Virus record (IMG/VR): IMGVR_UViG_3300022602_000024
Coordinates: 124,001-188,000 of that record
Direction: 5' to 3' (one strand)
DNA: 64,000 nt
Each line of letters opens with the position of its first letter. Position 1 is the first letter of the stretch. Shown one piece after another: positions 15,741-64,000 of this stretch. The position numbers and the translations under genes were made by a program. Below the pieces are notes generated by a model. The model made no database searches, was not told the origin of the DNA, and saw nothing but the letters and a program-made list of their open reading frames with translations.

Positions 15741-16472
15741 TTATTTAGCAGGTGGTACTACCAACTCATGAATATTTGTTACCAAACCTGGGCTTATAAG
15801 GTTCAAAAACGTAACAATAGACAAATCATTGGCGTAGAAGTACAGACTCCACATATAACCACTGGTTGATTGTAGTGCTCTACTTAATCCCCCAGTCATT
15901 TTAACTATTTCTTTGTCGGCTGAATTAAAATAATTCCACAACTGTTGTCTTGTTTCCCCGGGATAAAATCCATCTTTGAGTATTATTTTGTATCGGTATC
16001 CATTGTCAGTTTTTTTAATAATGGCACCAGAATTTAAAATTTCAGCAATAAAAGAATCTTCGGGTCCTGCAAGACCATGAGTATATTTTTTAAACAACAC
16101 GGGTGCTTGATCTACAATCTCTACTAGATCGTCTTCGGACTCTGTGTAGATTTGAATCCATGGTTCCTCTACTCGAATACGTGTATTGATAGTACGATCC
16201 TGCTTGAGTTGACGAATATGTTCTAAAAACTCAATATCGGCAGCTTCTAGGTCACGAGTTCTGCGACCCCACCAGCCAAAATGATTCATGTCTCGGTCCC
16301 AGACCTTTCGATGTTCAATAGTGCTCTCAATATCTTTGCTGTCAATGGCACGTCCACCAGGGGCATAAACCACAAGTTTGTAAAGATACTGATTAAAGTA
16401 TTTTTTAGTAGTGTGGGCTATTTCAATCTTAGGATTGAACTGAGTCCAGAACAATATATCCATTTGAATCAA
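15741..16472 (-). CDS. Hypothetical protein
   Basis: 243-aa ORF downstream of clpA. Confidence 0.6.
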   Translation of the reverse strand: MIQMDILFWTQFNPKIEIAHTTKKYFNQYLYKLVVYAPGGRAIDSKDIESTIEHRKVWDRDMNHFGWWGRRTRDLEAADIEFLEHIRQLKQDRTINTRIRVEEPWIQIYTESEDDLVEIVDQAPVLFKKYTHGLAGPEDSFIAEILNSGAIIKKTDNGYRYKIILKDGFYPGETRQQLWNYFNSADKEIVKMTGGLSRALQSTSGYMWSLYFYANDLSIVTFLNLISPGLVTNIHELVVPPAK

Positions 16473-18717
16473 TCATAGGTGAGGTTGGTGTAAATGGTCC
16501 CAACACATTGAATTTAAATTCTTTGTCAAAATCAACTTCTATAACGGTATTTACAGGCACATTTTCAAAAAGTATTTTTTTACTAAGTGGGACTTTAATC
16601 AAATCATTGATCTTACGTCCTAGGGGTCTAGCACCCATTTTGGCATCGTATCCTACTTCTGCCAAGTGATCTACCGCAGTTTCTGTAACACGAATACGAA
16701 TAGACTTTTCGCTAAGTAATTCATTAATTTCATTAATGAATTTACCGACAATTTTCTTGATACTCATGTTATCTAGTTTGTTAAACTTGCAAATACCGTC
16801 TAAACGATTACGAAACTCAGGTCTAAAGAAGTCTTTAACAGCCTTGTCGTCTTCGTCGGTTTTTTGTAATGCAGTACTAAATCCAATAGTATTGCGTTCA
16901 TTGTCGCTGGCACCCAAGTTACTAGTAAGAATAACAATGGCATTACGAGCATCAGCTTTTTTGCCATTACTGCTGGTAATCATACCTTCGTCCATTAAGG
17001 CCAGCAGGATGTTGGTAACGTCTGGGTGTGCTTTTTCAACTTCGTCGAATAAAATAATACAGTTAGGATTCTTTTCGATATCACTAATCAACATACCGCC
17101 ACCTAAGTTGCTGTCATCGTAGCCTACATAGCCCGGGGGTGCACCGATCAGTTTTGCAACTGTATGCTTTTCTTGATATTCACTCATGTCATAGCGTAAC
17201 AGTTTCATACCCATGCCTTCAGCCAATAACTTGGCCAATTCTGTTTTACCAGTACCTGTTGGGCCTAGAAACAAATAACTACCCACAGGCTTGTCCGGAC
17301 TCTTGAGTCCGGCACGAGCAACATAGATCTTTTCCAACACAGTATCTACTACTGTGTCTTGTCCGTACAACTTGTTTTTAATTGTTTCTTCCAGTCCTAC
17401 TAAGCTCTTGGTTGATTCGTTACCAATTTGTTCCACAGGAATCTTGGTAAACTTACTGATAATGTCTACAATATTGCTCTTACGTACAGTCCATCCCATA
17501 GCATTGATTTTTAACTTGGCGGCTGCAGTATCAATCAAGTCAATGGCTTTGTCAGGCAAACGTTTGTCTGGTTGATAACGCACACTTAAATCTACTGCAG
17601 ATTCAATAGCATCGTCACTGATATTGCCACCATGAAACTCTTCAAAATACTCACGTAGTCCACGTAAGATTTCTTTGGCAGTTGCTGGAGTAGGTTCTTC
17701 TACTGTTAGTCTACAGAATCTGCGCATTAGGGCACGATCTTTTTCAAAACTTTGTGTATATTCTTCCCATGTGGTCGAAGCAATAACTTTGATTTGTCCT
17801 TTGGTCAATGCAGGTTTAATCATGTTAGCAAAGTCTACACTTGATCCACCACTGCCAGCACCTGCACCACGCATTTGATGTGCTTCGTCAATGAACAATA
17901 TACATTTGCCTTTGGTTTGTAATGCACCAATAACGTCTTTGAACTTTTCTTCAAACTCGCCACGATACTTACTACCAGCAAGCAATGATCCGATATCTAG
18001 ATTGTAAACGACATAATCACGCAGGTAACCGGGAACTTCACCATTGACAATGTTACGTGCCAGGCCTTCGGCAATGGCAGTCTTACCTACTCCAGCATCT
18101 CCTACTAGTAATACATTTGATTTATTGCGTTTAGCTAATACCTGTGCTATTTCGTCTAGTTCAAATTCACGTCCCACTACAGGGTCAATACGACCTTCAC
18201 GTGCTTGTACATTTAAGTTTTCGCAATGTTCTTTTAGTATTTCGTCGGCACGAGCACTCATAGTACCACGGCGTGGTTTGGTTTCAACATAGTAACTGTT
18301 GTAGAACTCAACTACTGAGCTACGCTCCATTCCGTATTTGACAAAGAAGTAACTAGCGTAACTATTTGTTTCTCCAGCAAGACTCAAAAAGATATCGACA
18401 ATCTGTACATGATGGCGACCGCTAAACAGGACTTGTGTAAGTGCACGATTAAACACACGTTCTAAACTGTGTGTTTTCTTTGGAACACAATCTGCTTCGT
18501 TACTGACCAAATAAGTTTGTTTATTTAAATAGTCTTCTATATCATTCAGTAACCCAACAGTATCTACACCAAATGCAGTCATCAGGTCATTAAATGGTTT
18601 AAAGGTCATTAAGCCGTGTGTGAGATGCTCTAGCGTAACATACTCATGATTATATTTTTTTGCAATGTCTGTGGCATTGGCAATAACGACTTCAATTTCG
18701 GGATTGTGTTGTATCAT
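16429..18717 (-). CDS. clpA: Clp/Hsp100 ATPase, ClpA-like
   Basis: N-domain, Walker A GDAGVGKT and GPTGTGKT, FIDEAH, LIGAPPGYVG, FRPEFRNR, GARPL; no ClpB middle domain seen. Confidence 0.9.
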   Translation of the reverse strand: MIQHNPEIEVVIANATDIAKKYNHEYVTLEHLTHGLMTFKPFNDLMTAFGVDTVGLLNDIEDYLNKQTYLVSNEADCVPKKTHSLERVFNRALTQVLFSGRHHVQIVDIFLSLAGETNSYASYFFVKYGMERSSVVEFYNSYYVETKPRRGTMSARADEILKEHCENLNVQAREGRIDPVVGREFELDEIAQVLAKRNKSNVLLVGDAGVGKTAIAEGLARNIVNGEVPGYLRDYVVYNLDIGSLLAGSKYRGEFEEKFKDVIGALQTKGKCILFIDEAHQMRGAGAGSGGSSVDFANMIKPALTKGQIKVIASTTWEEYTQSFEKDRALMRRFCRLTVEEPTPATAKEILRGLREYFEEFHGGNISDDAIESAVDLSVRYQPDKRLPDKAIDLIDTAAAKLKINAMGWTVRKSNIVDIISKFTKIPVEQIGNESTKSLVGLEETIKNKLYGQDTVVDTVLEKIYVARAGLKSPDKPVGSYLFLGPTGTGKTELAKLLAEGMGMKLLRYDMSEYQEKHTVAKLIGAPPGYVGYDDSNLGGGMLISDIEKNPNCIILFDEVEKAHPDVTNILLALMDEGMITSSNGKKADARNAIVILTSNLGASDNERNTIGFSTALQKTDEDDKAVKDFFRPEFRNRLDGICKFNKLDNMSIKKIVGKFINEINELLSEKSIRIRVTETAVDHLAEVGYDAKMGARPLGRKINDLIKVPLSKKILFENVPVNTVIEVDFDKEFKFNVLGPFTPTSPMIDSNGYIVLDSVQS

Positions 18718-19639: not shown

Positions 19640-20320
19640 TTACTTGGCTGCTACGCCTGCTTCTTTTTCTTTGGTACGTCCAAATGCGCTAACACCTAGA
19701 ATACCACCAAAGGCCAAGTGGATAAGTCCACCGTTGCTCAAGGTCAAACTTTGCCATGCAGTATATCCAATTTGAACACCAAAGCCACGTTCTATAATAG
19801 GCAGGAACATACTGATCATAGGAAACGCCACAAAGTCCATAAAACAAATCAACATATATAACCAACCCATTGCTGGACGCCAAAATGCTTTCATCCAGTG
19901 TTCGGGTTCTTGTCCGGCCTGTGCGTTCATTAACTGTCCAAATGCTGCAGTGGTATTGGCATCGGGTGCTACCTGTTGCTGTTGTCCCATCATCGGGCGT
20001 TGTTGGTTGTATCCACTGCCAAATCCTCCTGATGGATTACCGAACCCGCCAGGTGAGCCTCCAAACCCGCCTCCGCTAAAGCTACTTGCGTTGTTCCCGC
20101 CGAGCGGGGTTGCACCAAAACCACTTGTGCTGGGACTGCCGAATCCTCCTGCTTGAGGTGCGCCAAATGCTGGTGCAGGTGTTGTTGCGGTGGGCGCGAC
20201 GGGTGTTGCATTGCTGGCTCCAAAGAAACTGGGAGCACTAGACGTTGCTCCGGGTGGTAATGCTGCAGGCGCAGTTGTTGTGGTTGCAGTTAATTGATCA
20301 TCAGGGTCTAATTTTGGCAT
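19640..20320 (-). CDS. Putative holin (GTA 3TM-like) with long Gly/Pro/Phe-rich N-terminus
   Basis: C-terminal WRPAMGWLYM..FGGILGVSAFGRTKEK; end of lysis cassette. Confidence 0.6.
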   Translation of the reverse strand: MPKLDPDDQLTATTTTAPAALPPGATSSAPSFFGASNATPVAPTATTPAPAFGAPQAGGFGSPSTSGFGATPLGGNNASSFSGGGFGGSPGGFGNPSGGFGSGYNQQRPMMGQQQQVAPDANTTAAFGQLMNAQAGQEPEHWMKAFWRPAMGWLYMLICFMDFVAFPMISMFLPIIERGFGVQIGYTAWQSLTLSNGGLIHLAFGGILGVSAFGRTKEKEAGVAAK

Positions 20321-21726: not shown

Positions 21727-22350
21727 TTATGCTCCGAATACTTGTAGTGCGTGTTGGAAGCGTGCTACCCGATCGTCTAGACCCAGGTAACCACCATTGA
21801 TCACTTTGGTTAGTCCATGCATGTCTTGTACATCTGCATAGTGATTGCAATTGTGATGTTCCCAGAAGAAACAAGCCGACTCTACTGCCCCGTCGGGAGT
21901 TTCACAATAGTTAACAGTTTCTTCTAGTCCTTTACCAATTTCCTTGGCAAATGCTTCGTATAGGCTACGGCCAGTGAGTTGAATCAATCCACGACCATGG
22001 AACATCCATCCATCTCCGCTTTCTTCGGGACCATTGCCCATACGGTCACAATAGGCTCGGTTGGCAATCATTTCAGGATGATGTGCGTATTGTTCGGCTA
22101 CACCTGGCGGGAAACGTTTTGGCCAAATGCTGCTTAACGCATGAGCCTGATAGTTTAAATTTTCTTTGAGCGCAGTATATCCGCCGGACTCGTGGGCAGT
22201 TTGCGCCATGAATGCCGCAACTCTTACTGGACTGGTAATTTGGTATTTAGGCAATTCATCACACAAGGCAGCATGCCATTGTGCGGATTGATGATTGCCT
22301 GCTAATATTTGTGCTACTTGATCTGCTCTAAAGTCAAACTCGAATGCCAT
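21727..22350 (-). CDS. GH19 chitinase/lysozyme-family endolysin
   Basis: AAFMAQTAHESGG, ENLNY, FHGRGLIQLTG, TKVINGG motifs; start at 22350 has SD GGAG. Confidence 0.9.
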   Translation of the reverse strand: MAFEFDFRADQVAQILAGNHQSAQWHAALCDELPKYQITSPVRVAAFMAQTAHESGGYTALKENLNYQAHALSSIWPKRFPPGVAEQYAHHPEMIANRAYCDRMGNGPEESGDGWMFHGRGLIQLTGRSLYEAFAKEIGKGLEETVNYCETPDGAVESACFFWEHHNCNHYADVQDMHGLTKVINGGYLGLDDRVARFQHALQVFGA

Positions 22351-22422
22351 AACTAACTCCTTTGATACAGTATTTACCAAAGGAGTTGTTAAATTTTATT
22401 ACGTTTCTATTATATACGCAGT

Positions 22423-23560: not shown

Positions 23561-24856
23561 TTATCTGATCTGCTTTAATTTTTTGTCTTTTATTGTAACA
23601 TTATTGTTAGTATAATTTTGCAAATACCCATTATTAGTAAATGCAGGAACGGTGTTATTGGTTGCAGTACTGGGTCCTAAATAATAAAACGGACTTAGTT
23701 GTATAGTTAACCCAGTGGGTTTATTTGATTCGTACAAAAAATATTTTGGATCTATTTTGTCTATTAGAAAATTAATTCCAGCCTCCCAGGCTCCGTACAA
23801 TTTTGTATTTTTAAAGTTCTGATAGAACCAAGTATCCATTTCATTATAAAAACTGTTGGTGGGTTTGCTTGTTTGCCATGTAGATAGGTCATAGTCTGGA
23901 TATATTATAGATTTAACAATATTCTCGTATGTACTGCGCCTAGCGATATTATTCATATTGGCAAATTCTACCAGGTAGTTAAGATGTGAATTGTGTGCTT
24001 GATCAAACCAATTTTTAACCAGATGAGCTTGTTTAATACATATTTCCGGAAAGTCGGGAGTCCAGTAGAACAATTCGTTTGTAATATTAGAGTAATCTCC
24101 AACTATTGGGTGAGCACTATTTGTATGCAAATCAGAAAAGAATAAGTACCACTCTTTATTAATCAACAATAAACGTGGTTTATCGATCCCAATAACCACT
24201 GCAATTTTTTTACCCGAATCTAATAAAGCACGATGCTCGGGCAAGTTAAATTGATCATATTTGTCACTGTGTGCTGGCTGAAACCAATGTCTTGTTTGAA
24301 AAATCCATGACTCATCTCTAGTATCTGCTTGTTCGAGCATATTTTCTGCAAAATCGTGAATCCTGACAATGGTTTTTGGAAAATTTGTTTTAACCCAATT
24401 TAACAAAGGCTGTGCAGCAAACTGAAACTCACTTAGAGTATTTTCTGCACTGGTGTTAAATGGATCGTTGGTTACATCTTTTTCGCCGGTTTTAGGATAT
24501 CTAAAAATTATCTCGTCTAAATGTATACCATTTAATAAAAAAGCAAATGCTGCAGTTGTGCTATCACTGCCCCCGCTGCATTCTAAACGAATATAATCAT
24601 AGTTGTCTCGTAGTTGTTGTGCACGCATACGATACAATTCTCTAATGTTAACACCGGGCTCTATTGTCCAGTCTAACTTACCATAAGTATCTAAATTAAA
24701 TTTCCAACTTGGCCCTTGGTTAACTTTGGTTGCATACATATACGCCTGGGGTTTAGAATAAAATATCTTATCACCAACTTTGTAGTATCCAAGTTTGGGG
24801 TTGGTATCAACCCCGGGTATATCGTAAATTGCCATAAGTTTATTGTAACGAGACAC
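23561..24856 (-). CDS. PP-loop (adenine nucleotide alpha-hydrolase / asparagine synthetase-like) protein
   Basis: SGGSDS motif; clear paralog of 26940..28130 (KLGYY.VGDKIF, FYWTPD.PE, WQ/FQTSKPTNSFYNEMD). Confidence 0.7.
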   Translation of the reverse strand: MSRYNKLMAIYDIPGVDTNPKLGYYKVGDKIFYSKPQAYMYATKVNQGPSWKFNLDTYGKLDWTIEPGVNIRELYRMRAQQLRDNYDYIRLECSGGSDSTTAAFAFLLNGIHLDEIIFRYPKTGEKDVTNDPFNTSAENTLSEFQFAAQPLLNWVKTNFPKTIVRIHDFAENMLEQADTRDESWIFQTRHWFQPAHSDKYDQFNLPEHRALLDSGKKIAVVIGIDKPRLLLINKEWYLFFSDLHTNSAHPIVGDYSNITNELFYWTPDFPEICIKQAHLVKNWFDQAHNSHLNYLVEFANMNNIARRSTYENIVKSIIYPDYDLSTWQTSKPTNSFYNEMDTWFYQNFKNTKLYGAWEAGINFLIDKIDPKYFLYESNKPTGLTIQLSPFYYLGPSTATNNTVPAFTNNGYLQNYTNNNVTIKDKKLKQIR

Positions 24857-25751
24857 CTTGTGTCAGACGGCGCCAATCATTGGTTTGTTTGTGGTACCAA
24901 GTTTGAATTTCGGCATCAGGGGCTTGGTCAATGTCTTGGCAATGGTCGGGCTTGAATGAATCTAATACAACTTGGCTACGACCTGCTTTTAGCAAGATTT
25001 CGCGCCATTCTTTAAATTTACTATCCGACATATTTGCAGGCACTAATAACTGTGCTGGGCTATTCATTAACTCTAAATCTTTGCTGAATCCTTCTGATGC
25101 TAATGTTTTGACTCCAGCAACAGTCTGATTACCGGTAATACCCAGTGCATAAATTTGATTTTTACCTTCTTTGTATTGTTCAATGTCGCCTAGGAAGTTG
25201 ACAGAAAAATCAGTTGTACCATTTAGAACTGACAATACTGCTTCGCTGGTGCTTTTAAAAGGAATAACAACCAAGTTGGGATATTTTTTAGCAAGTTGTG
25301 TAACTACAAGATGTGTAGTTGTGCCAAGCCCACTGATCCCGATGCTCAATGATTTATCATGTGGTACTTCATTCCATGATTTGTATTTTTTACTTGCAAT
25401 AACAATAGGGGCACTGCATACTGGCAATAGTTCTTTAAATTGACCAATGTCGTGACTTTCAGACACAGGAAAGAAATTGGGTCTAATAAAAAATGCAGAA
25501 CTATTTGCTAGAATAGAATTGTTTTGTGAATTACTTAGTATATAGTTGGCTGCAACACTACCACCAGCCCCGGGTTTAGTATCGAAAATAAATGTGTATT
25601 TGTCTTGTATTTTGTTTGCTTCGTCAGCAAGCGAGCGATGAAAGTTTGCTGCCGTGTCGGATGCTGTCCAACTATAAATGATTGTTACAACTTCTCGTGC
25701 CTGTGCAGTTAGTACAGAGGCGAGAAGGAGAACTGATAAAAGTTTTTTCAT
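24840..25751 (-). CDS. Bug/TctC-family periplasmic solute-binding protein
   Basis: Signal MKKLLSVLLLASVLTAQA; KPGAGGSVA; GLGTTTHL; IPFKSTSEA. Confidence 0.8.
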   Translation of the reverse strand: MKKLLSVLLLASVLTAQAREVVTIIYSWTASDTAANFHRSLADEANKIQDKYTFIFDTKPGAGGSVAANYILSNSQNNSILANSSAFFIRPNFFPVSESHDIGQFKELLPVCSAPIVIASKKYKSWNEVPHDKSLSIGISGLGTTTHLVVTQLAKKYPNLVVIPFKSTSEAVLSVLNGTTDFSVNFLGDIEQYKEGKNQIYALGITGNQTVAGVKTLASEGFSKDLELMNSPAQLLVPANMSDSKFKEWREILLKAGRSQVVLDSFKPDHCQDIDQAPDAEIQTWYHKQTNDWRRLTQGVSLQ

Positions 25752-25831
25752 AAAATATTTCCTATTTGTTTGTATGAGTATACGAGAAAGTGAATGGGAA
25801 GTCAATCCCATTCACTGATTGAAATTACCGA

Positions 25832-26773
25832 TTAGCTGTTCTTGATGTTGTTGATCAATCCAGCAGTAAAGTAGTCTTGATATTGATCATAAACTACTGC
25901 GGTAGCGGCCTTGAATCTAGCACGCTCTGTCACAGACAAATGTGATACTTTGATACCATCCTTAGCGGCTTGTTCTTGTACGTCGGCAATGTCACTGATA
26001 CTTTCAACACGTTCAATTTGTGCTGCTTCTAATGCTGCTTGTTGGAAGATTGTTTGAGTTTCGGCGTCCAAGCTGGCCCACAAGTCTTTGTTGATGATGA
26101 TACTGGTCAAGAACAAACTGTGTTCAGTGTGATTGATAACAGTGGAAACTTTGTATTGTCCCATGTTGTAGATGCGTGGGTATGTGCTTTCGCCCATGTC
26201 AACAGATCGATTACCAATGGCACCAGCCAAGTCTTCAATGGCCATAACAACTGGTTCTGCACCGACTGCTTTGAATGTGTCCACTGCCACTGGGCAATTT
26301 GCAACACGAATCTTCAAACCTTTGAATTGCTCAATACTGTTGATTTCTTCGTTGCCAGGAATGACACGGAAACCACCTGAGTATGTGTAAGCCAGGCCTT
26401 TGACGTTGGACTTGGCAGCCAAGCCATCAAACAGCTGTTGACCAACTGCGCCATCTAACACACGGCTAGCATGATCGTGGTCTTCAAAAATGTAAGGCAT
26501 ATCTAATGCATACATATCTTTGTCTAGTTGCCCCAATGTAGTTGTGTACATTTGGCTGATGTTGATTTCGCCATTATTAACTAAATCTAACAACTGATAA
26601 CGATCAACGCATTGGCCATTGTTGTATTTTTCTTCCCATTCAGTACAACTCAAAATCTCAATTTCGATATTGTTGTTGGTTTTTTCAGCTACTACTCGGC
26701 TGAAATGTTGTGCTGCACGCAAGAATAGATCGTAAGGCTCATGTGCTAGAACCCATGTGAGTTTTTTTGTCAT
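25832..26773 (-). CDS. dctP: DctP-family TRAP solute-binding protein lacking an obvious signal peptide
   Basis: DMPYIFEDHDH, GLAYTYSGGFR, FKGLKIRV, GAEPVVM motifs. Confidence 0.8.
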   Translation of the reverse strand: MTKKLTWVLAHEPYDLFLRAAQHFSRVVAEKTNNNIEIEILSCTEWEEKYNNGQCVDRYQLLDLVNNGEINISQMYTTTLGQLDKDMYALDMPYIFEDHDHASRVLDGAVGQQLFDGLAAKSNVKGLAYTYSGGFRVIPGNEEINSIEQFKGLKIRVANCPVAVDTFKAVGAEPVVMAIEDLAGAIGNRSVDMGESTYPRIYNMGQYKVSTVINHTEHSLFLTSIIINKDLWASLDAETQTIFQQAALEAAQIERVESISDIADVQEQAAKDGIKVSHLSVTERARFKAATAVVYDQYQDYFTAGLINNIKNS

Positions 26774-26810
26774 TTTGTTTTCCTTGTCAAAAAGTTTTAA
26801 TTTTTTGGCT

Positions 26811-26920
26811 AGTAGAGATTCTACTTACGGGAATCGGCGTTCTAAGTGTATCACACTAGTAAAAGGGTTTCACTACCCTAAGCGTCAATTTTGTTCCGAC
26901 GTCGGTTAATCCGGCGTTGC
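26811..26920 (-). ncRNA. Candidate cis-regulatory leader RNA of the dctP-bug operon
   Basis: Hairpins AGGGT/ACCCT (26864-79), AGTGT/ACACT (26845-57), AGTAGA/TCTACT (26811-25); palindrome CCGACGTCGG; ATAAATA just upstream at 26927-33. Confidence 0.45.
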
Positions 26921-26939
26921 TAATTTTATTTATCGCTTA

Positions 26940-28130
26940 CTAAAATTTGTGATGTATATTGATACCGGAATCTACAAAATGTGCATCACCTAGTTCGTAA
27001 AAAGGACTCAGAAATCCTATAAACCCCACTGGATTACCCATTTCTTTGTTAAAATATTTAGTATCAATATTATCTACTATGTATTTCAGTCCAGCTTGCC
27101 ACGCAGAATATGCGTGGGTGTCTTTGAAATTTTGATAAAACCAGTAATCCATTTCATTGTAAAAACTGTTGGTTGGCTTGCTGGTTTGAAATGTTGCTGG
27201 ATCGTAATCTGGATACAACAAAGGTTTAATAATATGTTCAAAGGTGGTTCTTTGTGCAAAGCTGTAGTTAGGCCATCTGGCTAGATACTGTAGATGTTTG
27301 TTCTGTGGCATGGCAAACCAGTTTTTAATTATGTGTGCTTGTTTACATAATAATTCCGGCATGTCGGGAGTCCAATAAAAATATTCATTTGTGATATTGG
27401 TCCATCGGCCCACTTCAGGATTTGCATTATTGGCCTGAGCATCTAAGAAATACAAGTACCATTTGCCTTCTTTGATACAGACCTTGGGTTTATCAACTCC
27501 CCATAACATGCATACACTTTTGCCGCCATCGAGAGTGTGTTTGTGACTATCCACTGCATCTACTGTGTGTTTAAATGCATGCCCGGGCTGAAAGTAATCT
27601 TTGGTGCGAAAGACCCATTCTTCGTCATGCCCGGTGTTCAGCATGTCTTGGGAATAGTCGTGAAATGTAATTTTTGTGTTGGGTGAATTGTCTGCTATCC
27701 AGTTTAAAAATGGTTTAGCCGCATACTCCCATTCGCTTAACGTATTTTCTGGTTTAGTGTTGAACGGATCTGCTAACATATTCTTTTCCCCAGTCTTGGG
27801 ATATCGAAATACAACTTCGTCTAAATGAATTTTATTTTTTATAAAACTATACGCTGCCGTTGAACTATCGCCGCCCCCAGACACCTCTAGTCGAATATAA
27901 TCATATCGGTCTCGTAACTGTTGAGCACGCAGTCGGTACAATTCCAATAAGCTGGATTCTGGTTCAACTTTCCACTGCACCTTACCAAAAATATCATTAT
28001 TGAAATTCCAAACTGGAAAATGCCCGGACTTGCTGGCATCAATCAATGCCAGTGGTTTTACGTAGAAAATTTTATCTCCTACTGTATAGTAACCTAATTT
28101 GGGATTTTGTTCGTTGAGAATTTCGGTCAT
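26940..28130 (-). CDS. PP-loop (asparagine synthetase-like) protein
   Basis: SGGGDS motif; paralog of 23561..24856. Confidence 0.7.
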   Translation of the reverse strand: MTEILNEQNPKLGYYTVGDKIFYVKPLALIDASKSGHFPVWNFNNDIFGKVQWKVEPESSLLELYRLRAQQLRDRYDYIRLEVSGGGDSSTAAYSFIKNKIHLDEVVFRYPKTGEKNMLADPFNTKPENTLSEWEYAAKPFLNWIADNSPNTKITFHDYSQDMLNTGHDEEWVFRTKDYFQPGHAFKHTVDAVDSHKHTLDGGKSVCMLWGVDKPKVCIKEGKWYLYFLDAQANNANPEVGRWTNITNEYFYWTPDMPELLCKQAHIIKNWFAMPQNKHLQYLARWPNYSFAQRTTFEHIIKPLLYPDYDPATFQTSKPTNSFYNEMDYWFYQNFKDTHAYSAWQAGLKYIVDNIDTKYFNKEMGNPVGFIGFLSPFYELGDAHFVDSGINIHHKF

Positions 28131-28897
28131 AATGTATTGGTGCGTAGTCTGAAACTGATGGCCATTAATTTGTCTGTTGAATAACTAGCACATGGTTTAA
28201 TTTGATGCAAATATCTGCTGTCCCACACCATTATTCTTCCGGGACGGGGAGCCACTACATTTTCTACATCGCCAATGGGAAAGTTGCGTGGTTGATCTTG
28301 CTCGTATTTGCCGGTAAAATCTCCAGTGGTTGCATCATCACCGTGGAACAAAGTTTCACCGTACAATTGCGGGTGCCATTCGGTGTTGGCAAAATATACC
28401 AAGGTGTAGCAAGTATCATCATCCAAGAATGGGTTGTCACGGTGCACTGCCTTGCTGCGGGCACGAAACTCTACATCCATGCCGTCACCGTACACACGCC
28501 AGGCACTGTTGGCTGCACCGGGTTCGCCATTGCTTTTTGTTATTCCCTGCACTGGACTAATGCCCTGCATGTAATTCATACTTTCCGGAACTCCGGCAAT
28601 GGTGAACTTGTTTTCGGTCAACTCATTTATGTGTTGCCATAATTTAAACACTCGATTGGCACGATTTTCTAAACTGGCTTCGTCCCACGCCAGGGGTAAC
28701 CTCAACGCAGCCGGTAAATCTCTCGGGGTTACCCATTTGTTATTCCTGGGATACCAATTTGAATGTGGCCGATCATAGAAGTTTACGCAATATTCACTGT
28801 CTAGCAAATACTCGTATACATCATTTAGCAATGTTGAAGGTACTTCGTTATCGTACACCACCAATGAGTACGACCCCGGTTTAATTGATTTGGTCAT
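28127..28897 (-). CDS. 2OG-Fe(II) oxygenase (prolyl hydroxylase-like)
   Basis: HRD..YTLVYFANTEW..GETLF..PGRI..LH..ISFR; start moved to 28897. Confidence 0.8.
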   Translation of the reverse strand: MTKSIKPGSYSLVVYDNEVPSTLLNDVYEYLLDSEYCVNFYDRPHSNWYPRNNKWVTPRDLPAALRLPLAWDEASLENRANRVFKLWQHINELTENKFTIAGVPESMNYMQGISPVQGITKSNGEPGAANSAWRVYGDGMDVEFRARSKAVHRDNPFLDDDTCYTLVYFANTEWHPQLYGETLFHGDDATTGDFTGKYEQDQPRNFPIGDVENVVAPRPGRIMVWDSRYLHQIKPCASYSTDKLMAISFRLRTNTL

Positions 28898-28904
28898 AAT
28901 TCTT

Positions 28905-29561
28905 TTATGTATTATTGAGTCTGGTATTTCTTGTTGGTTGACACCCTGCAAGTATAACTTCATCTAACCAATATGACTCAATTGGTGTTATGTATTTGTG
29001 ATTGGCATCTACAGTTATAAACTTCATAATATCAGGGTCATCGTATGCAACAGGGAATTCTAATATGCGACTAACCCATTTTAAATAATGAGTAGTGTGT
29101 AAAAAGAAAGCCTCATGATCTAAGTAGTGTACAGGAAAATCACTGTTAAGTAAAGTGTTATAGTAATAATTTTGGGCAATTGGAGTGGTATGTTCTTTAC
29201 GAACTCGAAGTTGTTGTACTTGGTTAATATTTTGGTCCCGCACAATGATTGCTATTTGCACGTCGACCCCAAACTCACGAGCACGCTCTGCCACTTCTAG
29301 GATCTTGGGAACATAACGTATCCCATCAAAAAAGAAAGGGCAACTTACATTGGCTAGATGATAGTCTTTGCCGTCAAACATTGACTCTGTTAAACGTTCG
29401 GGGTGCACCCAATACTCAGCAAAGGGTTCTTGATCACTAGGTATCCAGTAGTTGTCCAGCATTTCTTCCCAACCAGCGACCTCGGGATGTAAACTTAATA
29501 ATCGACTAAACAAATGGTTACCTGATCCTTGGGGACCAGTGATAATTAATAACTTCTTCAT
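28905..29561 (-). CDS. Sulfotransferase-like P-loop protein
   Basis: IITGPQGSGNHL N-terminal loop; IIVRD motif. Confidence 0.55.
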   Translation of the reverse strand: MKKLLIITGPQGSGNHLFSRLLSLHPEVAGWEEMLDNYWIPSDQEPFAEYWVHPERLTESMFDGKDYHLANVSCPFFFDGIRYVPKILEVAERAREFGVDVQIAIIVRDQNINQVQQLRVRKEHTTPIAQNYYYNTLLNSDFPVHYLDHEAFFLHTTHYLKWVSRILEFPVAYDDPDIMKFITVDANHKYITPIESYWLDEVILAGCQPTRNTRLNNT

Positions 29562-30229
29562 ACAGTCATTATAGAACTGTTTTTCAATCTTGTCAAAAAC
29601 TTTCTGGTGTCGGGAGTAATAATACCAGTTAACTGCAATGTCACACGTGGTTTAAATCCTGCGTTGGCAGTACTGTGGGGAACATTTTGCCAATCAAATG
29701 TGGTCACATCGCCTGACTTCCAGCCGCGGTAATGGAAATTACCGTACTCCCAAAACTGGCCTGGTTCCCAATCAGTCAATGCTATGAAGTATCTACCAAC
29801 CCGAGTTGGATCTTCAGGAAACCATTTGTACAGTTTATCAATGTGTAGGTGCCATAATTGTCCGGGCATTTGTACATGTATTCGCTCCATGCAATCTTCT
29901 AACGCAAAATGATCACTTATGCGTTGCAGTGGCTCGGGCAATTTCCATGCCAAGTTGGTAATGGTGACTTTGGGATCTACACCAATGCGTTCTAAATCGT
30001 ATTCTTCTTCCTCTAGTTCGGGCTTGGGTACAAATACGCCTTCGCCTTTGAACCCGCGTGTTTCCCAGTTAGCTGGTTTTGAATCTGCCACAATCTGTTT
30101 TACTTCTTCATCCCAGTTAGGTTCAAATTTTCCTAACTTGATCACAGTATCGAACCGTGGGTCAATACGATCATTATCAAAATGATATTCACTTTTTTCT
30201 GCTAATTTATCCCAGCTGCTTTGTTTCAT
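29558..30229 (-). CDS. 2OG-Fe(II) oxygenase (Asp/Asn beta-hydroxylase-like)
   Basis: HLHID, PHSTAN..PRVTLQ. Confidence 0.7.
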   Translation of the reverse strand: MKQSSWDKLAEKSEYHFDNDRIDPRFDTVIKLGKFEPNWDEEVKQIVADSKPANWETRGFKGEGVFVPKPELEEEEYDLERIGVDPKVTITNLAWKLPEPLQRISDHFALEDCMERIHVQMPGQLWHLHIDKLYKWFPEDPTRVGRYFIALTDWEPGQFWEYGNFHYRGWKSGDVTTFDWQNVPHSTANAGFKPRVTLQLTGIITPDTRKFLTRLKNSSIMTV

Positions 30230-30846
30230 ATTACTGTTACCCTTATGTCATCCGCACCGTAATTTTGATTGTACTCGGTGGGCGGTTGTTGTATATTTAC
30301 TACTTTGGCCAACTCTTGATTTGTATTAACAATGTGTCCCTTATAACGCCATACTGCTTCTTGTATGTCTCGATTTTGTGCTGAGATAATTGTAGCCATT
30401 GTGCGTAAATCTTTATAGTACTGATCGTACCTAGGATAAGTTATATCGAAGTGCCCACATTTTACCCACCAGCCAAGACAAGCATCATTGGGACGTTGTA
30501 CCAACACAATGGGGCAGTCTGGCCAGTAATCCTTTAAGAAGTCTATGTGATGTGCAAATACATGACTCTTGATGATGCGCACACCCGATCCTCTGAACGG
30601 GCGGTCAAATTCGGCTTCGCATAATTCTTTGGTATAGCGATTGATCGTGTCAAAGAAGCCGCCAAATTCCATGCCGGGATCAAAGTATGCACCCATGTGC
30701 ATCAACTGTGTAGTGCCTGATGCATCATGATAATAAGTACGCTCTTCACTATAATCTGACCTATCAATGTCGGCACTGTAGTAAATATTCTTGCTTACAC
30801 TGCTCCATTTAGAACCTGGAGCACCAGTCATAAAAATATACTTCAT
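30226..30846 (-). CDS. Sulfotransferase-like protein
   Basis: FMTGAPGSKWS; IIKSH; IVLVQR. Confidence 0.5.
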   Translation of the reverse strand: MKYIFMTGAPGSKWSSVSKNIYYSADIDRSDYSEERTYYHDASGTTQLMHMGAYFDPGMEFGGFFDTINRYTKELCEAEFDRPFRGSGVRIIKSHVFAHHIDFLKDYWPDCPIVLVQRPNDACLGWWVKCGHFDITYPRYDQYYKDLRTMATIISAQNRDIQEAVWRYKGHIVNTNQELAKVVNIQQPPTEYNQNYGADDIRVTVI

Positions 30847-31817
30847 TCTTTACTTAAATCAATCTTTTCCAATACAGGTAAAAAGGTTGCACGTAATTCA
30901 TCCATGGTTCGCCGCAGGCCTGCAGGTGTTAACTCTGACTCTTCGTAAAACACTACATTTGATTCCATCCACTCTGCATATTCTCGACTGCGAATTGCAG
31001 CACTGAACTTTCGCTGGTACCAATCAACCACATCGGCTGGTGCACCTTTAGGCAACTCTAAACTCCAGGCCGCATACACTCTGATACCAGGTGCCACATC
31101 TCGCAACAATGGAACGTCAGGAAACTGTTTCATCGTTCTGGTTCCTGTAAATCCAATGGCACGAACCTTACCTGCATCGACTAATGGTTTAGCAACTGCA
31201 ATGGGCATGATACCAAACTCTGTGCCGACCCGGCCATCATACTGTGCTACACTTTGTACTGCTGGTGCTGGCCCATTGAACTTGATTGGCTTGACCATGT
31301 CTCTATTGCCATGTCCTTTTTCCATCAAGTATTCAAATGCAGTACGATGTGCTCCGCCCCCGACAGCTATGTTAATAGGAGCACTGGTGATTCGAATAAG
31401 TCTTATAAACTCCTCAGGAGTAGTAATAGTGCTCTTAGTACTTGCTACTAATACTAATGGGCTCTTACCCATTGTTAGTACATCTGTAAAATCATCATAG
31501 CAAAACTTTTTAACTTTCTTTTCCCAAATGTCATTGGTAACATATGTACTCATATGACTAGGCAAGCTAATAGTATACCCATCTGCAGGCTCGCCTAAGA
31601 ATTTGTTTTGTGCAACTACGCTATCTGCTCCGGGAATGTTTTGTACCACATAGGTAAAATTAGGATTTGTTTTTTGTACAATCTCTGCTAGTTTTCTAAA
31701 TGCAATTTCATTACCAGCACCGGGAGTGTTGCCTACAATAACTGTCACTGGCCGAGTAGGTTCCCAGGCTAACGCTAGCACAGGTACTAGTAATAATATT
31801 GCTAAAAGTTTTTTCAT
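30843..31817 (-). CDS. Bug/TctC-family periplasmic solute-binding protein
   Basis: Signal MKKLLAILLLVPVLALA; PGAG, IPGADS, DAGKVRAIG, FPDVP. Confidence 0.85.
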   Translation of the reverse strand: MKKLLAILLLVPVLALAWEPTRPVTVIVGNTPGAGNEIAFRKLAEIVQKTNPNFTYVVQNIPGADSVVAQNKFLGEPADGYTISLPSHMSTYVTNDIWEKKVKKFCYDDFTDVLTMGKSPLVLVASTKSTITTPEEFIRLIRITSAPINIAVGGGAHRTAFEYLMEKGHGNRDMVKPIKFNGPAPAVQSVAQYDGRVGTEFGIMPIAVAKPLVDAGKVRAIGFTGTRTMKQFPDVPLLRDVAPGIRVYAAWSLELPKGAPADVVDWYQRKFSAAIRSREYAEWMESNVVFYEESELTPAGLRRTMDELRATFLPVLEKIDLSKE

Positions 31818-32377
31818 TTTGTTTCCTTGAATAATAAATTGTTAATTTCGTCTGGTATCCATGCAACTGGCATACGTTCGGGGTGCCATACAACACCAGC
31901 TATTGCTAATCTTCTGTCTATCCACGCTTCGCAGTTGCCATGTTCATCTGTAGCAAGTTCGGTGGCAGTATCTTGCAACTGTTCAATGTACAAATTATGA
32001 TAACTGTTTACTAATTTTGTTTCACCAAAATAATTCACTTGATGTGCAGTATCCAGGTGTCCTTCTATTTCGCCTATTTTGCCGCCTAATATGTCTGTTA
32101 GTAAAAAACAACCATGGCAAACACCAACCACAGGCTTTTGTTGCTTTATTGTTTCTATTACTAGGTTTAACTCTGTTGTTCTACGTACTGCACTATCATC
32201 CCCGCCGGTTATAACAAGTGCATCAATTGAATTGGCCAATTCTGTAAAATCTTGATCTGCTCTATTTGCAATAGGAACGAGCGTATGACTTTTTAAATAC
32301 ACGTACCACAGGTGTTCCAGTGAATCATACGCTCGACCTTTATGAAATAAAACTCGTTGAGTGAGTCCTATCTTCAA
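31814..32377 (-). CDS. Class I glutamine amidotransferase-like (peptidase C26/PuuD-like)
   Basis: ITGGDD, GVCHG, VNSYH, WHPE; likely TTG start at 32377 beside upstream stop. Confidence 0.8.
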   Translation of the reverse strand: MKIGLTQRVLFHKGRAYDSLEHLWYVYLKSHTLVPIANRADQDFTELANSIDALVITGGDDSAVRRTTELNLVIETIKQQKPVVGVCHGCFLLTDILGGKIGEIEGHLDTAHQVNYFGETKLVNSYHNLYIEQLQDTATELATDEHGNCEAWIDRRLAIAGVVWHPERMPVAWIPDEINNLLFKETK

Positions 32378-32378
32378 A

Positions 32379-33071
32379 TTACCATCCGTAAGCGTCAGCA
32401 ACCAATTGCTTGCCGGATTTAGCAGCAACTGTATTACGGCAGCTAATATCATACAGGTCTCTGCGCATTGCAGCTACCAACTCTTGTATACGGTCCATAT
32501 TTTCTTCTGTGACCAATTGTTCTAATTTGCGTCCGCCGATGTTGGCATGGAAGCCTTCGTCCTTGGCAATCTTGCGATATGCACCAGAGATAAACTCATC
32601 TTCAATACAGTCGGCCATGGTGTTCCATACTGCTTCTGCACGACCTTCAGCAACTAGTTGATAAGCGGCCAATGCAACTGGATCAGTTTCGGCACCGTAC
32701 TTGGCTAATAGTCCAGCGCCTTTAGCAGTTGGTTTTGCAGCCTCTTTAGCAATAGCAGCTTCAACATCAACTGGGCCGCCTTGGATGTGTTCAATGACTT
32801 CTTTGACTAAACGGAAGTGCACTGCTTCATCGTGTGCTTGTTGTGTTAACAGTTGTAGTTCTACTGGATCTGCGTCTGCGGGCATTGTAGCGATTGCTTG
32901 GCTGATTTCAACCATGTTCATACGCTCATTTACCATACGACCAACGAAGTGTTCTACTAGTTCTTCCTGGGCAGGCTTTGAGTCAAAGTATGCTTTGACA
33001 TTGTGTTGGCTTGCTCGGAATAGTGCTTGATTGTCTGCTACGATTTGAGCAACAAATTGTTTTGCGTTCAT
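32379..33071 (-). CDS. Ferritin-like di-iron protein
   Basis: Two ExxH motifs (DEAVH, DEGFH) plus NERMNMVE and AEGRAE helices. Confidence 0.7.
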   Translation of the reverse strand: MNAKQFVAQIVADNQALFRASQHNVKAYFDSKPAQEELVEHFVGRMVNERMNMVEISQAIATMPADADPVELQLLTQQAHDEAVHFRLVKEVIEHIQGGPVDVEAAIAKEAAKPTAKGAGLLAKYGAETDPVALAAYQLVAEGRAEAVWNTMADCIEDEFISGAYRKIAKDEGFHANIGGRKLEQLVTEENMDRIQELVAAMRRDLYDISCRNTVAAKSGKQLVADAYGW

Positions 33072-62863: not shown

Positions 62864-62892
62864 ATTTTAGCACAAGTTGTGCTGAAGGTCAA
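62864..62892 (-). promoter_or_regulatory. Sigma70-type promoter TTGACC-17-TAAAAT
   Basis: Exact spacing; extended -10 TG. Confidence 0.7.
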
Positions 62893-63254
62893 TCGAAATA
62901 ACGCTTGGTTTGGACAATCCAGCCAATTTTGGCTATGTCCGTTTCCACTTCGGGTGTGATATAACTTTCTTCTACAAATCCATCAAAGTCTGTTCCGCTA
63001 AATCCAGTGCCGGAACAATACCAGTTATGGTAGCTATCATCTTCCCGTATTTCGGATATCATTACTGCGGCATGACTCCAACTGCAATCCCATTGAATGT
63101 TTTTCAATATGGCCCATACATCCTTGGGAGAATACAGGTTATTGCACAGGGCAGCATATAAATTTTGAGCGTAAATTTCCCGATGCCGTACTTTATCAAT
63201 GATCCAGTTGGCACCACGTATATCGCGTTCTAGATTAAAAACACGTCTGCTCAT
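62889..63254 (-). CDS. Phage hypothetical protein
   Basis: YAQNLYAALCNN..YHNWYCSG. Confidence 0.6.
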   Translation of the reverse strand: MSRRVFNLERDIRGANWIIDKVRHREIYAQNLYAALCNNLYSPKDVWAILKNIQWDCSWSHAAVMISEIREDDSYHNWYCSGTGFSGTDFDGFVEESYITPEVETDIAKIGWIVQTKRYFD

Positions 63255-63376: not shown

Positions 63377-64000
63377 ATGACAGAACGTCGTAAAATTCGT
63401 TGGCTAATTGCCCATTTTCCCGCATACTTATTCATAAGAACTGCAGAAGCATTTAGTGCCGAATTAGAAAAAATGCGCCCAGGAGAATTTGAAATTGAAA
63501 TTCTCACCATGAAAGATTATGTAAACAAATACAACAAATTGCATGAATTCCTGATAGCACCGCCAGGAGTTGAAGGACTTGAAGATGGCCCAGCTGGCGG
63601 CGCAGCTAGATGGGAAAAAGCAGTGAGCAAATGGCCTAAAATGTTCGCGGCATTAGGTGATGGCGAGTTTGAACTAAGTCAAACGCCAATTGGTCTAATC
63701 GGAACACATCTATATAGAAATTTCTCCGCAATAGATCTACCTTTCTTATTTAAAGATCATGACCACGTAACTGACGTATTAGATGGGCAAATTGGAGATA
63801 GCTTATGTAATCAACTAGCCAAAGAAACACCTATCAGAGGGTTAGCATTTACCTATTCGGGTGGGTATAGAGTAATAGGTTCAAAGCAGAAAATTAAAAA
63901 TCTAACAGAACTTTCTGCAACCAAGTTGTTAACACACAGTATACACAGTAGCAAATTATTCAAAGGCATAGGAGCCAAAACATTTGGTAAACAATATTCA
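63377..64000 (+). CDS. Second DctP-like TRAP solute-binding protein (partial, runs off window end)
   Basis: Manual translation MTERRKIRWLIAHFP..DLPFLFKDHDH..GLAFTYSGGYR; SD AGGAG; not in ORF track. Confidence 0.8.
   Translation, partial: MTERRKIRWLIAHFPAYLFIRTAEAFSAELEKMRPGEFEIEILTMKDYVNKYNKLHEFLIAPPGVEGLEDGPAGGAARWEKAVSKWPKMFAALGDGEFELSQTPIGLIGTHLYRNFSAIDLPFLFKDHDHVTDVLDGQIGDSLCNQLAKETPIRGLAFTYSGGYRVIGSKQKIKNLTELSATKLLTHSIHSSKLFKGIGAKTFGKQYS

What the first reader, a model, noticed from the sequence alone, without database searches (positions are those of the whole stretch)
24840..31817. Orphan solute-binding proteins; DctP copies lack signal peptides
Seen: two Bug/TctC genes with signal peptides and two DctP genes (25832 and 63377) that start directly with the mature-domain motif (LTWVLAHEP / IRWLIAHFP) with no hydrophobic signal; no DctQM or TctAB in the window. 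Inference: cytoplasmic DctPs may be metabolite or immune-signal sponges or sensors rather than transport components.
Basis: partly seen in the sequence, partly recalled or inferred. Interest (0 to 1): 0.6.

Follow-up and report, generated by a model that had tools for sequence, protein, structure and literature searches.

The report
Cytoplasmic DctP binding proteins in phages
A 354-kb jumbo phage carries two DctP-type solute-binding proteins that truly lack export signals and belong to a large, conserved, mostly viral clade that probably binds an organic acid inside the infected cell rather than in the periplasm.

Summary
The window lies in a 354,429-bp phage genome judged 98% complete. It encodes two TctC/Bug proteins with Sec-type signal peptides and two DctP-family proteins with none. 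No upstream start or hydrophobic stretch exists in any frame. The whole phage has no DctQ, DctM, TctA or TctB.

The missing signal is not an artefact. The 120 closest homologues all lack one, as do all 96 DctP genes in the 88 viral loci analysed (390 viral stretches matched overall). In a tree, nearly all signal-less copies form one well-supported clade. It sits inside a grade of signal-bearing homologues from Bdellovibrionota and Elusimicrobia. Both groups share the same conserved putative binding-site residues, including the carboxylate-binding arginine. The AlphaFold model is a complete TRAP binding-protein fold.

Gene context points to metabolism. In 37 of 52 distinct neighbourhoods the gene lies within two genes of an asparagine-synthetase-like PP-loop ligase or a signal-bearing binding protein. 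Fe/2OG oxygenases recur nearby, and some relatives add TctA/TctB or an MFS carrier.

Best reading (inferred): a cytoplasmic organic-acid receptor in a phage uptake-and-processing module. The ligand is unknown.

The parts
25832..26773 (-). DctP1: signal-less DctP-family binding protein, 313 aa
   Evidence: PF03480 at 199.6 bits. No upstream start and no hydrophobic N-terminus. AF2 model pLDDT 95.2 with TM 0.87-0.88 to solved TRAP binding proteins. R136 in the SGGFR motif is invariant.
63377..64000 (+). DctP2: N-terminal 208 codons of a second, divergent signal-less DctP. The full gene is 343 aa and ends 408 bases beyond the window (L002:1240-2271).
   Evidence: PF03480 at 93.3 bits for the whole gene. 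Sequence. No signal or upstream start. Its closer viral relatives are also signal-less.
24840..25751 (-). TctC1: Bug/TctC-family binding protein with a Sec-type signal. Probable start is the MKKLL methionine; the longest ORF reaches 25811.
   Evidence: PF03401 at 31.7 bits against a cut-off of 27. Hydropathy 2.76 with an AQA cleavage-like site. The ortholog in LR796233.1 is 303 aa.
30843..31817 (-). TctC2: Bug/TctC-family binding protein with a Sec-type signal
   Evidence: PF03401 at 74.8 bits. N-terminal hydropathy 3.21.
26940..28130 (-). PP-loop ligase B (396 aa), asparagine-synthetase-B-like, directly upstream of DctP1
   Evidence: SGGGDS motif. AF2 model pLDDT 86. VIA-align Z 11.4 to E. 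coli AsnB over 291 residues, then human ASNS, TsnB9, beta-lactam synthetase and carbapenam synthetase. Foldseek gives the same family. No Pfam, PHROG, NCBIfam or PDB sequence hit.
23561..24856 (-). PP-loop ligase A (431 aa), paralogue of ligase B (52% identity)
   Evidence: SGGSDS motif. 52% identical to ligase B. Falls in the same gene cluster, c3, in viral loci.
28127..28963 (-). Fe(II)/2OG-oxygenase-like protein (278 aa)
   Evidence: PF13640 at 22.4 bits, below the cut-off of 27. Homologues occur in 14 viral loci, often next to DctP.
28905..29561 (-). Small P-loop protein (218 aa), function unknown
   Evidence: Walker-A-like N-terminus read from the sequence. No family hit. Syntenic in LR796233.1 and in L081/L083.
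29558..30229 (-). 223-aa protein of unknown function, conserved in the module
   Evidence: No family hit. Syntenic homologues in L009, L081 and L083.
30226..30846 (-). Small P-loop protein (206 aa), function unknown
   Evidence: Walker-A-like N-terminus. No family hit. Syntenic homologues in 5 loci.
31814..32452 (-). Class-I glutamine amidotransferase / peptidase C26-like protein (212 aa)
   Evidence: PF07722 at 51.4 bits and PF00117 at 48.2 bits. The best NCBIfam match is gamma-glutamyl-CDP-amidate hydrolase at 65 bits, far below its cut-off of 250.

Best explanation
DctP1 and DctP2 are cytoplasmic ligand-binding proteins. They belong to an old clade of DctP-type TRAP binding proteins that lost the signal peptide, kept the whole two-lobe fold, and kept the binding-site residues of their periplasmic relatives.

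They most likely bind a small organic acid inside the infected cell. A carboxylate is the leading guess; a sulfonate is not excluded.

Proposed sequence of events:
1. An exported binding protein captures the compound in the periplasm. Here that is TctC1/TctC2; in other phages it is a signal-bearing DctP.
2. A secondary carrier brings it in. In this phage that would be the host's TctAB. Relatives encode phage TctAB, and Bdellovibrio uses an MFS carrier.
3. The cytoplasmic DctP binds it. This keeps the free concentration low and holds the compound for the neighbouring enzymes.
4. Those enzymes are asparagine-synthetase-like PP-loop ligases, which adenylate carboxyl groups, and Fe/2OG oxygenases.

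**Shown:** absence of a signal; clade structure; fold; conserved residues; gene linkage; absence of membrane subunits in the phage.

**Inferred:** cytoplasmic location; ligand class; the sink or hand-off role; use of host permeases.
For: 1. **No signal in this phage.** Both copies lack a signal and any alternative start.
2. **No signal in relatives.** None is seen in the 120 closest homologues, in 96 viral cluster members, or in 10 DctP2-like relatives. The same heuristic flags signals on neighbouring TctC and DctP genes.
3. **One clade.** A clade with 97% SH-aLRT support holds 79 rows: 61 viral, 16 signal-less rows from MAGs (metagenome-assembled genomes), and 2 rows whose apparent signal comes from an over-extended ORF. 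It nests in a grade of signal-bearing Bdellovibrionota and Elusimicrobia homologues.
4. **Same site.** Forty-four conserved positions were tabulated; the listed core is identical or nearly so in 85 signal-less and 28 nearby signal-bearing sequences: H11, E12, P13, Q74, Y76, T77, H99, H101, TYSGG-R136, E195, T197, R200, H218, S219. R136 aligns with the arginine of solved TRAP binding proteins.
5. **Complete fold.** pLDDT 95, TM 0.87-0.88.
6. **Gene linkage.** Among 52 distinct gene arrangements, 27 have a PP-loop gene within two genes, 20 have a signal-bearing binding protein, and 37 have one or the other.
7. **Ligase type.** The PP-loop protein is AsnB-like, Z 11.4. A relative passes the Pfam Asn_synthase threshold.
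8. **Carriers in relatives.** Relatives place TctA/TctB, or a signal-bearing DctP, in the same gene string.
9. **Bacterial counterpart.** On a 184-kb Bdellovibrio contig with ordinary bacterial genes, a signal-less copy follows an MFS carrier and a 204-aa protein with an HxD...H motif (iron-binding motif typical of Fe/2OG oxygenases). The two genes overlap at stop and start, and the 204-aa protein has a viral homologue between TctC and DctP.
Against: - No ligand is identified and no localisation was measured.
- Linkage is strong but not universal: 15 of 52 arrangements have neither partner. DctP2 itself sits away from the module, among small unknown genes.
- The ligase substrate is unknown, so the match between 'carboxylate binder' and 'carboxylate-adenylating enzyme' is circumstantial.
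- Signal-bearing relatives in Bacteriovoracaceae are also not next to DctQM. The ancestral transport partner is therefore itself unverified.
- The tree is midpoint-rooted. The direction of change (loss of the signal) is inferred from the rule that DctP proteins are exported.
Confidence: 0.5

Rival explanations
1. Sponge or sequestering protein. The cytoplasmic DctP soaks up a host metabolite or an immune second messenger, to blunt a defence system or rewire host regulation, and passes it to no enzyme.
For: - The protein is cytoplasmic, abundant in phages, single-domain, high-affinity by family, and has no fused output domain.
- 15 of 52 arrangements lack the ligase or binding-protein partners.
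- DctP2 lies among small unknown genes.
Against: - The binding-site residues match those of periplasmic relatives that serve uptake.
- The pocket keeps the carboxylate arginine typical of organic-acid binders.
- The recurrent neighbours are metabolic, not anti-defence, and occur also on a bacterial chromosome.
- Pfam and PHROGs return only DctP and an unnamed DctP-like phage family.
Confidence: 0.12
2. PBP-fold enzyme. The clade has become a catalyst, as Thi5 or MqnD did, acting on an organic acid in the module's pathway.
For: - Several invariant polar residues are present: H11, H99, H101, H218, E195, R200.
- The location is cytoplasmic.
- The genes lie in enzyme-rich islands.
Against: - The same residues are equally conserved in signal-bearing periplasmic relatives. 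They are therefore a subfamily binding signature, not a novelty of the cytoplasmic clade.
- The DHDH-like motif also occurs in the solved binding protein 4xfe.
- All top structural matches are binding proteins.
Confidence: 0.08
3. Still a TRAP transport subunit. The protein reaches the periplasm by an unconventional route and feeds the host's DctQM.
For: The complete fold and binding site are retained. The host genome is unknown and may encode DctQM.
Against: - Only 5-9 residues precede strand 1, so there is no room for a Sec, Tat or lipoprotein signal.
- The same phages put normal signals on TctC, and in some loci on an adjacent DctP. Export is evidently encoded where wanted.
- The neighbouring TctC signals are Sec-type, which rules out Tat hitch-hiking. 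This rests on my reading.
Confidence: 0.05
4. Decaying or mis-called gene. The signal was lost by truncation and the genes are relics.
For: None beyond the missing signal.
Against: - Intact ORFs occur among 390 viral stretches that encode a relative.
- 38 columns are invariant down to 34% identity.
- The model is high-confidence and complete.
- Ribosome-binding sites sit at the starts.
Confidence: 0.02

Closest known systems
Periplasmic DctP-type TRAP binding proteins (for example SiaP, IseP, and the EFI structures 4xfe, 4p47, 4ovs)
   Same: Same Pfam family and the same full two-lobe fold (TM 0.87-0.88). The conserved arginine in the GG(F/Y)R hairpin is retained.
   Different: No signal peptide, and no DctQ/DctM in the genome. 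Only 21-25% identical to any solved member in the Foldseek alignments. The genes are linked to PP-loop ligases and Fe/2OG oxygenases rather than to DctQM.
Signal-bearing 'WVLAHEP' DctP homologues of Bdellovibrionota and Elusimicrobia
   Same: Closest cellular relatives at 36-47% identity, with identical conserved putative binding-site residues.
   Different: These carry classical Sec signals. In Bacteriovoracaceae they lie beside methylmalonyl-CoA mutase and MeaB.
Orphan Bug/TctC binding proteins of Betaproteobacteria (TTT family)
   Same: TctC1 and TctC2 are exported TctC-family proteins with no adjacent tctAB. This matches the many Bug proteins that share a few TctAB permeases (PMC5812351).
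   Different: Here the genes are carried by a phage, and the permease would be the host's. Related phages carry their own TctA/TctB. tctA was previously noted as a viral auxiliary gene of unknown role (PMC4164917).
Phage-encoded periplasmic binding proteins such as cyanophage PstS (from my own knowledge, not tested here)
   Same: A phage supplies a binding protein to boost nutrient acquisition by the infected cell.
   Different: PstS is exported and works with the host ABC permease. The DctPs described here stay in the cytoplasm.
Phage immune-signal sponges (Tad1, Tad2, Acb2; from my own knowledge)
   Same: Cytoplasmic phage proteins whose only activity is tight binding of a small molecule.
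   Different: Those are small oligomeric proteins of unrelated folds that bind nucleotide-derived signals. Here the protein is a 313-aa monomer-type PBP fold with an organic-acid pocket in a metabolic gene context.

Membership tests
DctP-type TRAP solute-binding protein (PF03480) | Profile match above the curated threshold | tested here: met
   DctP1 scores 199.6 bits and DctP2 93.3 bits; the cut-off is 23.4. Both fall below the stricter TIGR00787 cut-off (150.8 and 74.2 against 175) but pass NF037995.
DctP-type TRAP solute-binding protein (PF03480) | Complete two-lobe type II binding-protein fold | tested here: met
   AF2 pLDDT 95.2. Foldseek TM 0.87-0.88 over about 310 columns to 4p47, 8t9t, 7bbr and 4xfe.
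DctP-type TRAP solute-binding protein (PF03480) | Conserved arginine that pairs with the ligand's carboxylate | tested here: met
   R136 is invariant in 21 of 21 and 84 of 85 family members. It aligns with the arginine of 4xfe and 4p47.
DctP-type TRAP solute-binding protein (PF03480) | N-terminal signal peptide and extracytoplasmic location | tested here: not met
   No hydrophobic N-terminus, no upstream start, and strand 1 begins at residue 3. This rests on a heuristic, not SignalP. Localisation cannot be measured with these tools.
DctP-type TRAP solute-binding protein (PF03480) | Cognate DctQ/DctM membrane subunits | tested here: not met
   No hit in the 354-kb phage record. The host genome is unknown.
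TTT binding protein (TctC/Bug, PF03401): TctC1 and TctC2 | Profile match above threshold plus a signal peptide | tested here: met
   31.7 and 74.8 bits against a cut-off of 27. MKKLL-type signals with hydropathy 2.76 and 3.21.
TTT binding protein (TctC/Bug, PF03401): TctC1 and TctC2 | TctA/TctB permease encoded with it | tested here: not met
   None in this phage. Present in related loci: TctA in 8 viral loci and TctB in 4.
Asparagine-synthetase-B-like PP-loop amidoligases (the neighbouring 396-aa and 431-aa proteins) | SGGxDS PP-loop and an AsnB-type synthetase fold | tested here: met
   The motif is present. Z 11.4 to 1ct9 over 291 residues, with ASNS, TsnB9, beta-lactam and carbapenam synthetases next.
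Asparagine-synthetase-B-like PP-loop amidoligases (the neighbouring 396-aa and 431-aa proteins) | Sequence-profile membership (PF00733) | tested here: inconclusive
   The window's two proteins give no Pfam hit. A related viral PP-loop protein (L052) scores 22.4 bits against a cut-off of 21.
Phage immune-signal sponges | Homology to a known sponge family, or binding of a nucleotide-derived signal | tested here: not met
   Homology: Pfam and PHROGs return only DctP-type families. Binding cannot be tested with these tools.

The most novel reading that the evidence does not exclude
Phages, and some predatory bacteria, run a two-receptor relay. An exported binding protein captures an organic acid outside. 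A secondary carrier (TTT or MFS) moves it in. A dedicated cytoplasmic DctP receives it, makes uptake effectively one-way, and hands it to adenylating ligases and oxygenases. This would be the first intracellular partner protein described for binding-protein-dependent secondary transport.
Probability: 0.3. Interest if true: 0.75.

Novelty: new variant of a known kind. Interest (0 to 1): 0.55.

Why it matters
DctP proteins are textbook periplasmic receptors. A large, conserved clade that works inside the cell would widen what this fold is known to do. It would also add a new kind of auxiliary gene to aquatic jumbo and T4-like phages.

The recurring pairing of an exported binder with a cytoplasmic binder suggests a way to make secondary uptake one-directional. 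That idea can be tested with simple binding and localisation assays.

The clade also marks a set of uncharacterised phage AsnB-like ligases and oxygenases whose substrate could be found through the binding protein's ligand.

Tried and rejected
- **Complex prediction.** A job for the PP-loop ligase B with DctP1 returned 'no answer' (score 0.00). It counts neither for nor against binding.
- **Cultured phages.** Megablast of the module found nothing. tblastn of DctP1 found only matches of 27% identity or less, mostly in fragmentary records.
- **PP-loop proteins by sequence.** No hit in Pfam, PHROGs, NCBIfam or PDB. Only structure comparison placed them.
- **Other membrane proteins in the phage.** I asked whether four consecutive multi-membrane-span ORFs at the genome start could be the missing permease. 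They have no Pfam match and no similarity to TctA/TctB.
- **Literature.** Six searches found tctA as a viral auxiliary gene and orphan Bug proteins, but nothing on signal-less phage DctP. 'dCTP' contaminates searches for 'DctP'.
- **Ligand guesses, none established.**
  - 2-oxoglutarate or succinate, suggested by the linked 2OG oxygenases and by methylmalonyl-CoA mutase next to bacterial relatives.
  - A sulfonate, suggested by TauD-type oxygenases, DUF2061 genes and the similarity to IseP.


Full report
**What the window is.** The window is bases 124001-188000 of a 354,429-bp virus record that CheckV rates 98% complete. Its large terminase is 54% identical to that of the Pseudomonas jumbo phage PA5oct group and 52% to Sinorhizobium phage Phosso. 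This is therefore a jumbo myovirus-type phage, probably of a Gram-negative host. The host itself is unknown. The closest record found is an uncultured freshwater-type phage, LR796233.1 (369.6 kb). It has the same gene order around the finding.

**Observation check.**
- All four genes exist. DctP1 (25832-26773, minus strand) scores 199.6 bits on PF03480. DctP2 (from 63377, full length 343 aa in L002) scores 93.3 bits. TctC1 and TctC2 pass the PF03401 threshold.
- Both DctP ORFs are already the longest possible. The upstream DNA has stops and no hydrophobic stretch in any frame, and both starts follow ribosome-binding sites.
- N-terminal hydropathy is 0.54 for DctP1 and 1.59 for DctP2, against 2.76 and 3.21 for the two TctCs. 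The TctCs have typical MKKLL Sec signals.
- The whole phage has no DctM, DctQ or TctA match. It also has no similarity to a related phage's TctA or TctB.
Signal calls rest on a hydropathy heuristic, because no signal-peptide predictor was available.

**The missing signal is a conserved trait of a large clade.**
- The word-based protein search found 1,418 relatives. The best 120 share 58-100% identity, are 312-338 aa long, and start within a few residues of the W-V-L-A-H-E-P motif. None has a hydrophobic leader.
- A scan of IMG/VR found 390 viral stretches that encode a relative. None of the 96 DctP genes in the 88 analysed loci looks exported. The same test flags signals on their TctC-type neighbours.
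- The closer relatives of DctP2 are signal-less too.
- No cultured phage in the INPHARED set carries a close homologue.

**Origin.**
- A scan of species-representative genomes found relatives mostly in MAGs (metagenome-assembled genomes) of Bdellovibrionota and Elusimicrobia.
- Homologues at roughly 26-47% identity on long bacterial contigs carry classical Sec signals. One example lies on a 1.8-Mb Bacteriovorax contig.
- In a maximum-likelihood tree of 128 sequences, one clade with 97% SH-aLRT support holds 61 viral and 16 signal-less MAG sequences. It also holds two rows whose 'signal' is an over-extended ORF. This clade nests in a grade of signal-bearing bacterial sequences.
- A few further signal-less copies lie outside it: one long-branch viral copy, and some Myxococcota and Elusimicrobia copies.
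- The root is midpoint only. I infer the direction of change (loss of the signal) from the general rule that DctP proteins are exported.

**Fold and binding site.**
- The AlphaFold model of DctP1 has pLDDT 95.2. It superposes on full-length mature TRAP binding proteins at TM 0.87-0.88.
- Thirty-eight columns are invariant down to 34% identity. They include the arginine of the S-G-G-F/Y-R hairpin, which aligns with the arginine of 4xfe and 4p47.
- The core of the conserved positions (H11, E12, P13, Q74, Y76, T77, H99, H101, R136, E195, T197, R200, H218, S219) is as conserved in 28 signal-bearing relatives as in 85 signal-less ones.
- From this I infer that both versions bind the same kind of ligand, and that the cytoplasmic clade did not acquire a new active site.
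- Which of these residues line the pocket is inferred from their position in loops. I had no model coordinates to check it.

**Gene context.**
- In the window the minus-strand gene string runs in this order:
  1. amidotransferase-like protein
  2. TctC2
  3. P-loop protein
  4. 223-aa protein
  5. P-loop protein
  6. 2OG-oxygenase-like protein
  7. PP-loop ligase B
  8. DctP1
  9. TctC1
  10. PP-loop ligase A

  
- The two PP-loop proteins carry SGGxDS motifs and have no sequence-family hit. The model of ligase B (pLDDT 86) matches E. coli asparagine synthetase B at Z 11.4 over 291 residues. Human ASNS, TsnB9, beta-lactam synthetase and carbapenam synthetase follow. All of these enzymes adenylate a carboxyl group.
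- The 88 viral loci give 52 distinct four-neighbour arrangements. Of these, 27 have a PP-loop gene within two genes of DctP, 20 have a signal-bearing binding protein, 37 have one or the other, and 10 have both.
- The module occurs in very different phage backbones.
- Related loci add TctB and TctA (L007 and others). Others add a signal-bearing DctP directly upstream of the signal-less one (L069 type), TauD-type or other 2OG oxygenases, IscU/IscA, or a DUF2061 membrane protein.
- On a 184-kb Bdellovibrio contig with ordinary bacterial genes, a signal-less copy follows an MFS carrier and a 204-aa protein with an HxD...H motif (iron-binding motif typical of Fe/2OG oxygenases). The two genes overlap at stop and start. 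That 204-aa protein has a viral homologue lying between TctC and DctP. The cytoplasmic form is therefore not restricted to phages.

**Most likely mechanism.**
- The repeated pairing is an exported binder, sometimes a carrier, a signal-less DctP, and enzymes that activate or oxidise organic acids.
- It fits a cytoplasmic receptor that takes up the imported compound, keeps its free level low, and holds it for the ligases and oxygenases.
- In this phage the carrier would be the host's TctAB. That is inference.
- The ligand is unknown. Carboxylates are favoured by the arginine and by the ligase type. A sulfonate is not excluded.
- My confidence in this reading is about 0.5.

**Rivals.**
- *Sponge for a metabolite or an immune signal (0.12).* Compatible with the location. 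The binding site shared with uptake receptors, and the metabolic context, argue against it.
- *PBP-fold enzyme (0.08).* Unlikely, because the conserved residues are not specific to the cytoplasmic clade.
- *Unconventional export to serve host DctQM (0.05).* There is no room for any signal, and the same phages encode normal signals where they need them.
- *Gene decay (0.02).* Excluded by the conservation.

**Comparison with what is known.**
- The proteins meet the sequence, fold and arginine criteria of the DctP family. They fail the two criteria that make a DctP a TRAP transport subunit: export and cognate DctQM.
- I therefore class them as a signal-less variant of the family, not as TRAP transporter components.
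- The orphan TctCs are ordinary. Orphan Bug proteins are well documented (PMC5812351), and tctA is a known viral auxiliary gene of unknown role (PMC4164917).
- I found no paper describing signal-less phage DctPs, but the library is incomplete.

**Limits.**
- There is no ligand, no localisation and no expression data.
- The complex prediction gave no answer.

Noticed in passing
Own genome G000:C1:3128-7090 (outside the window; L013:3128-7090): Four consecutive ORFs of 223, 221, 409 and 209 aa with 5-9 predicted membrane spans each. None has a Pfam match or similarity to TctA/TctB.
   Followed up: partly
Own genome G000:C1:79174-79806 (L166:1060-1692): A 210-aa protein with an N-terminal P-loop that I read as APS-kinase-like, fused to a C-terminal DUF2061 membrane domain. 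Free-standing DUF2061 genes occur in 21 of the related viral loci, mostly directly upstream of the signal-less DctP.
   Followed up: partly
L069:8676-9806 and the equivalent genes in L060-L063, L071, L072: A 376-388-aa DctP-family protein with a clear signal peptide (PF03480, 113 bits) lies directly upstream of the signal-less DctP. This makes an exported-plus-cytoplasmic pair from the same family.
   Followed up: partly
L052:6973-8412 and the equivalent genes in L053-L059, L068: The signal-less DctP is followed by an AsnB-like PP-loop gene and then by IscU-like and IscA-like iron-sulfur scaffold genes (read from their sequences, not scanned).
   Followed up: no
L114, L115, L116, L120, L123 (Bacteriovoracaceae contigs): The signal-bearing bacterial relatives of this DctP subfamily sit beside a ~717-aa gene, confirmed in L114 as methylmalonyl-CoA mutase with MeaB alongside, not beside DctQM. 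One DctM gene lies elsewhere in 3 of 5 genomes checked.
   Followed up: partly
window 16429-18717 (-), 2360-4312 (-), 4453-6417 (-): A ClpB-like double-AAA+ chaperone, a 650-aa protein with an Amidoligase_2 domain, and a 654-aa fusion of a dCMP/cytidine-deaminase domain with a weak GNAT acetyltransferase match.
   Followed up: no
window 19640-20320 (-) and 21727-22380 (-): A 226-aa protein that is mostly a Gly/Ser/Thr/Pro/Ala-rich low-complexity stretch with a hydrophobic C-terminal part. It lies near a 217-aa probable GH19-type endolysin; the ortholog in LR796233.1 has a faint GH19 hit.
   Followed up: no
window 62889-63254 (-) and L002:2900-3262 (-): Two paralogous ~120-aa proteins of unknown function flank DctP2. 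Both share a conserved pattern with paired Cys-Ser-Trp and Trp-Tyr-Cys-Ser-Gly motifs.
   Followed up: no
L009:16591-17802 (LR796233.1, the closest related phage record): An isocitrate-lyase / PEP-mutase family gene lies a few genes beyond the shared module, next to the lysis genes.
   Followed up: no
window 32379-33071 (-): A 230-aa protein with no family hit carries two Glu-x-x-His-like motifs that look like a ferritin-like di-iron site. This rests on reading the sequence only.
   Followed up: no
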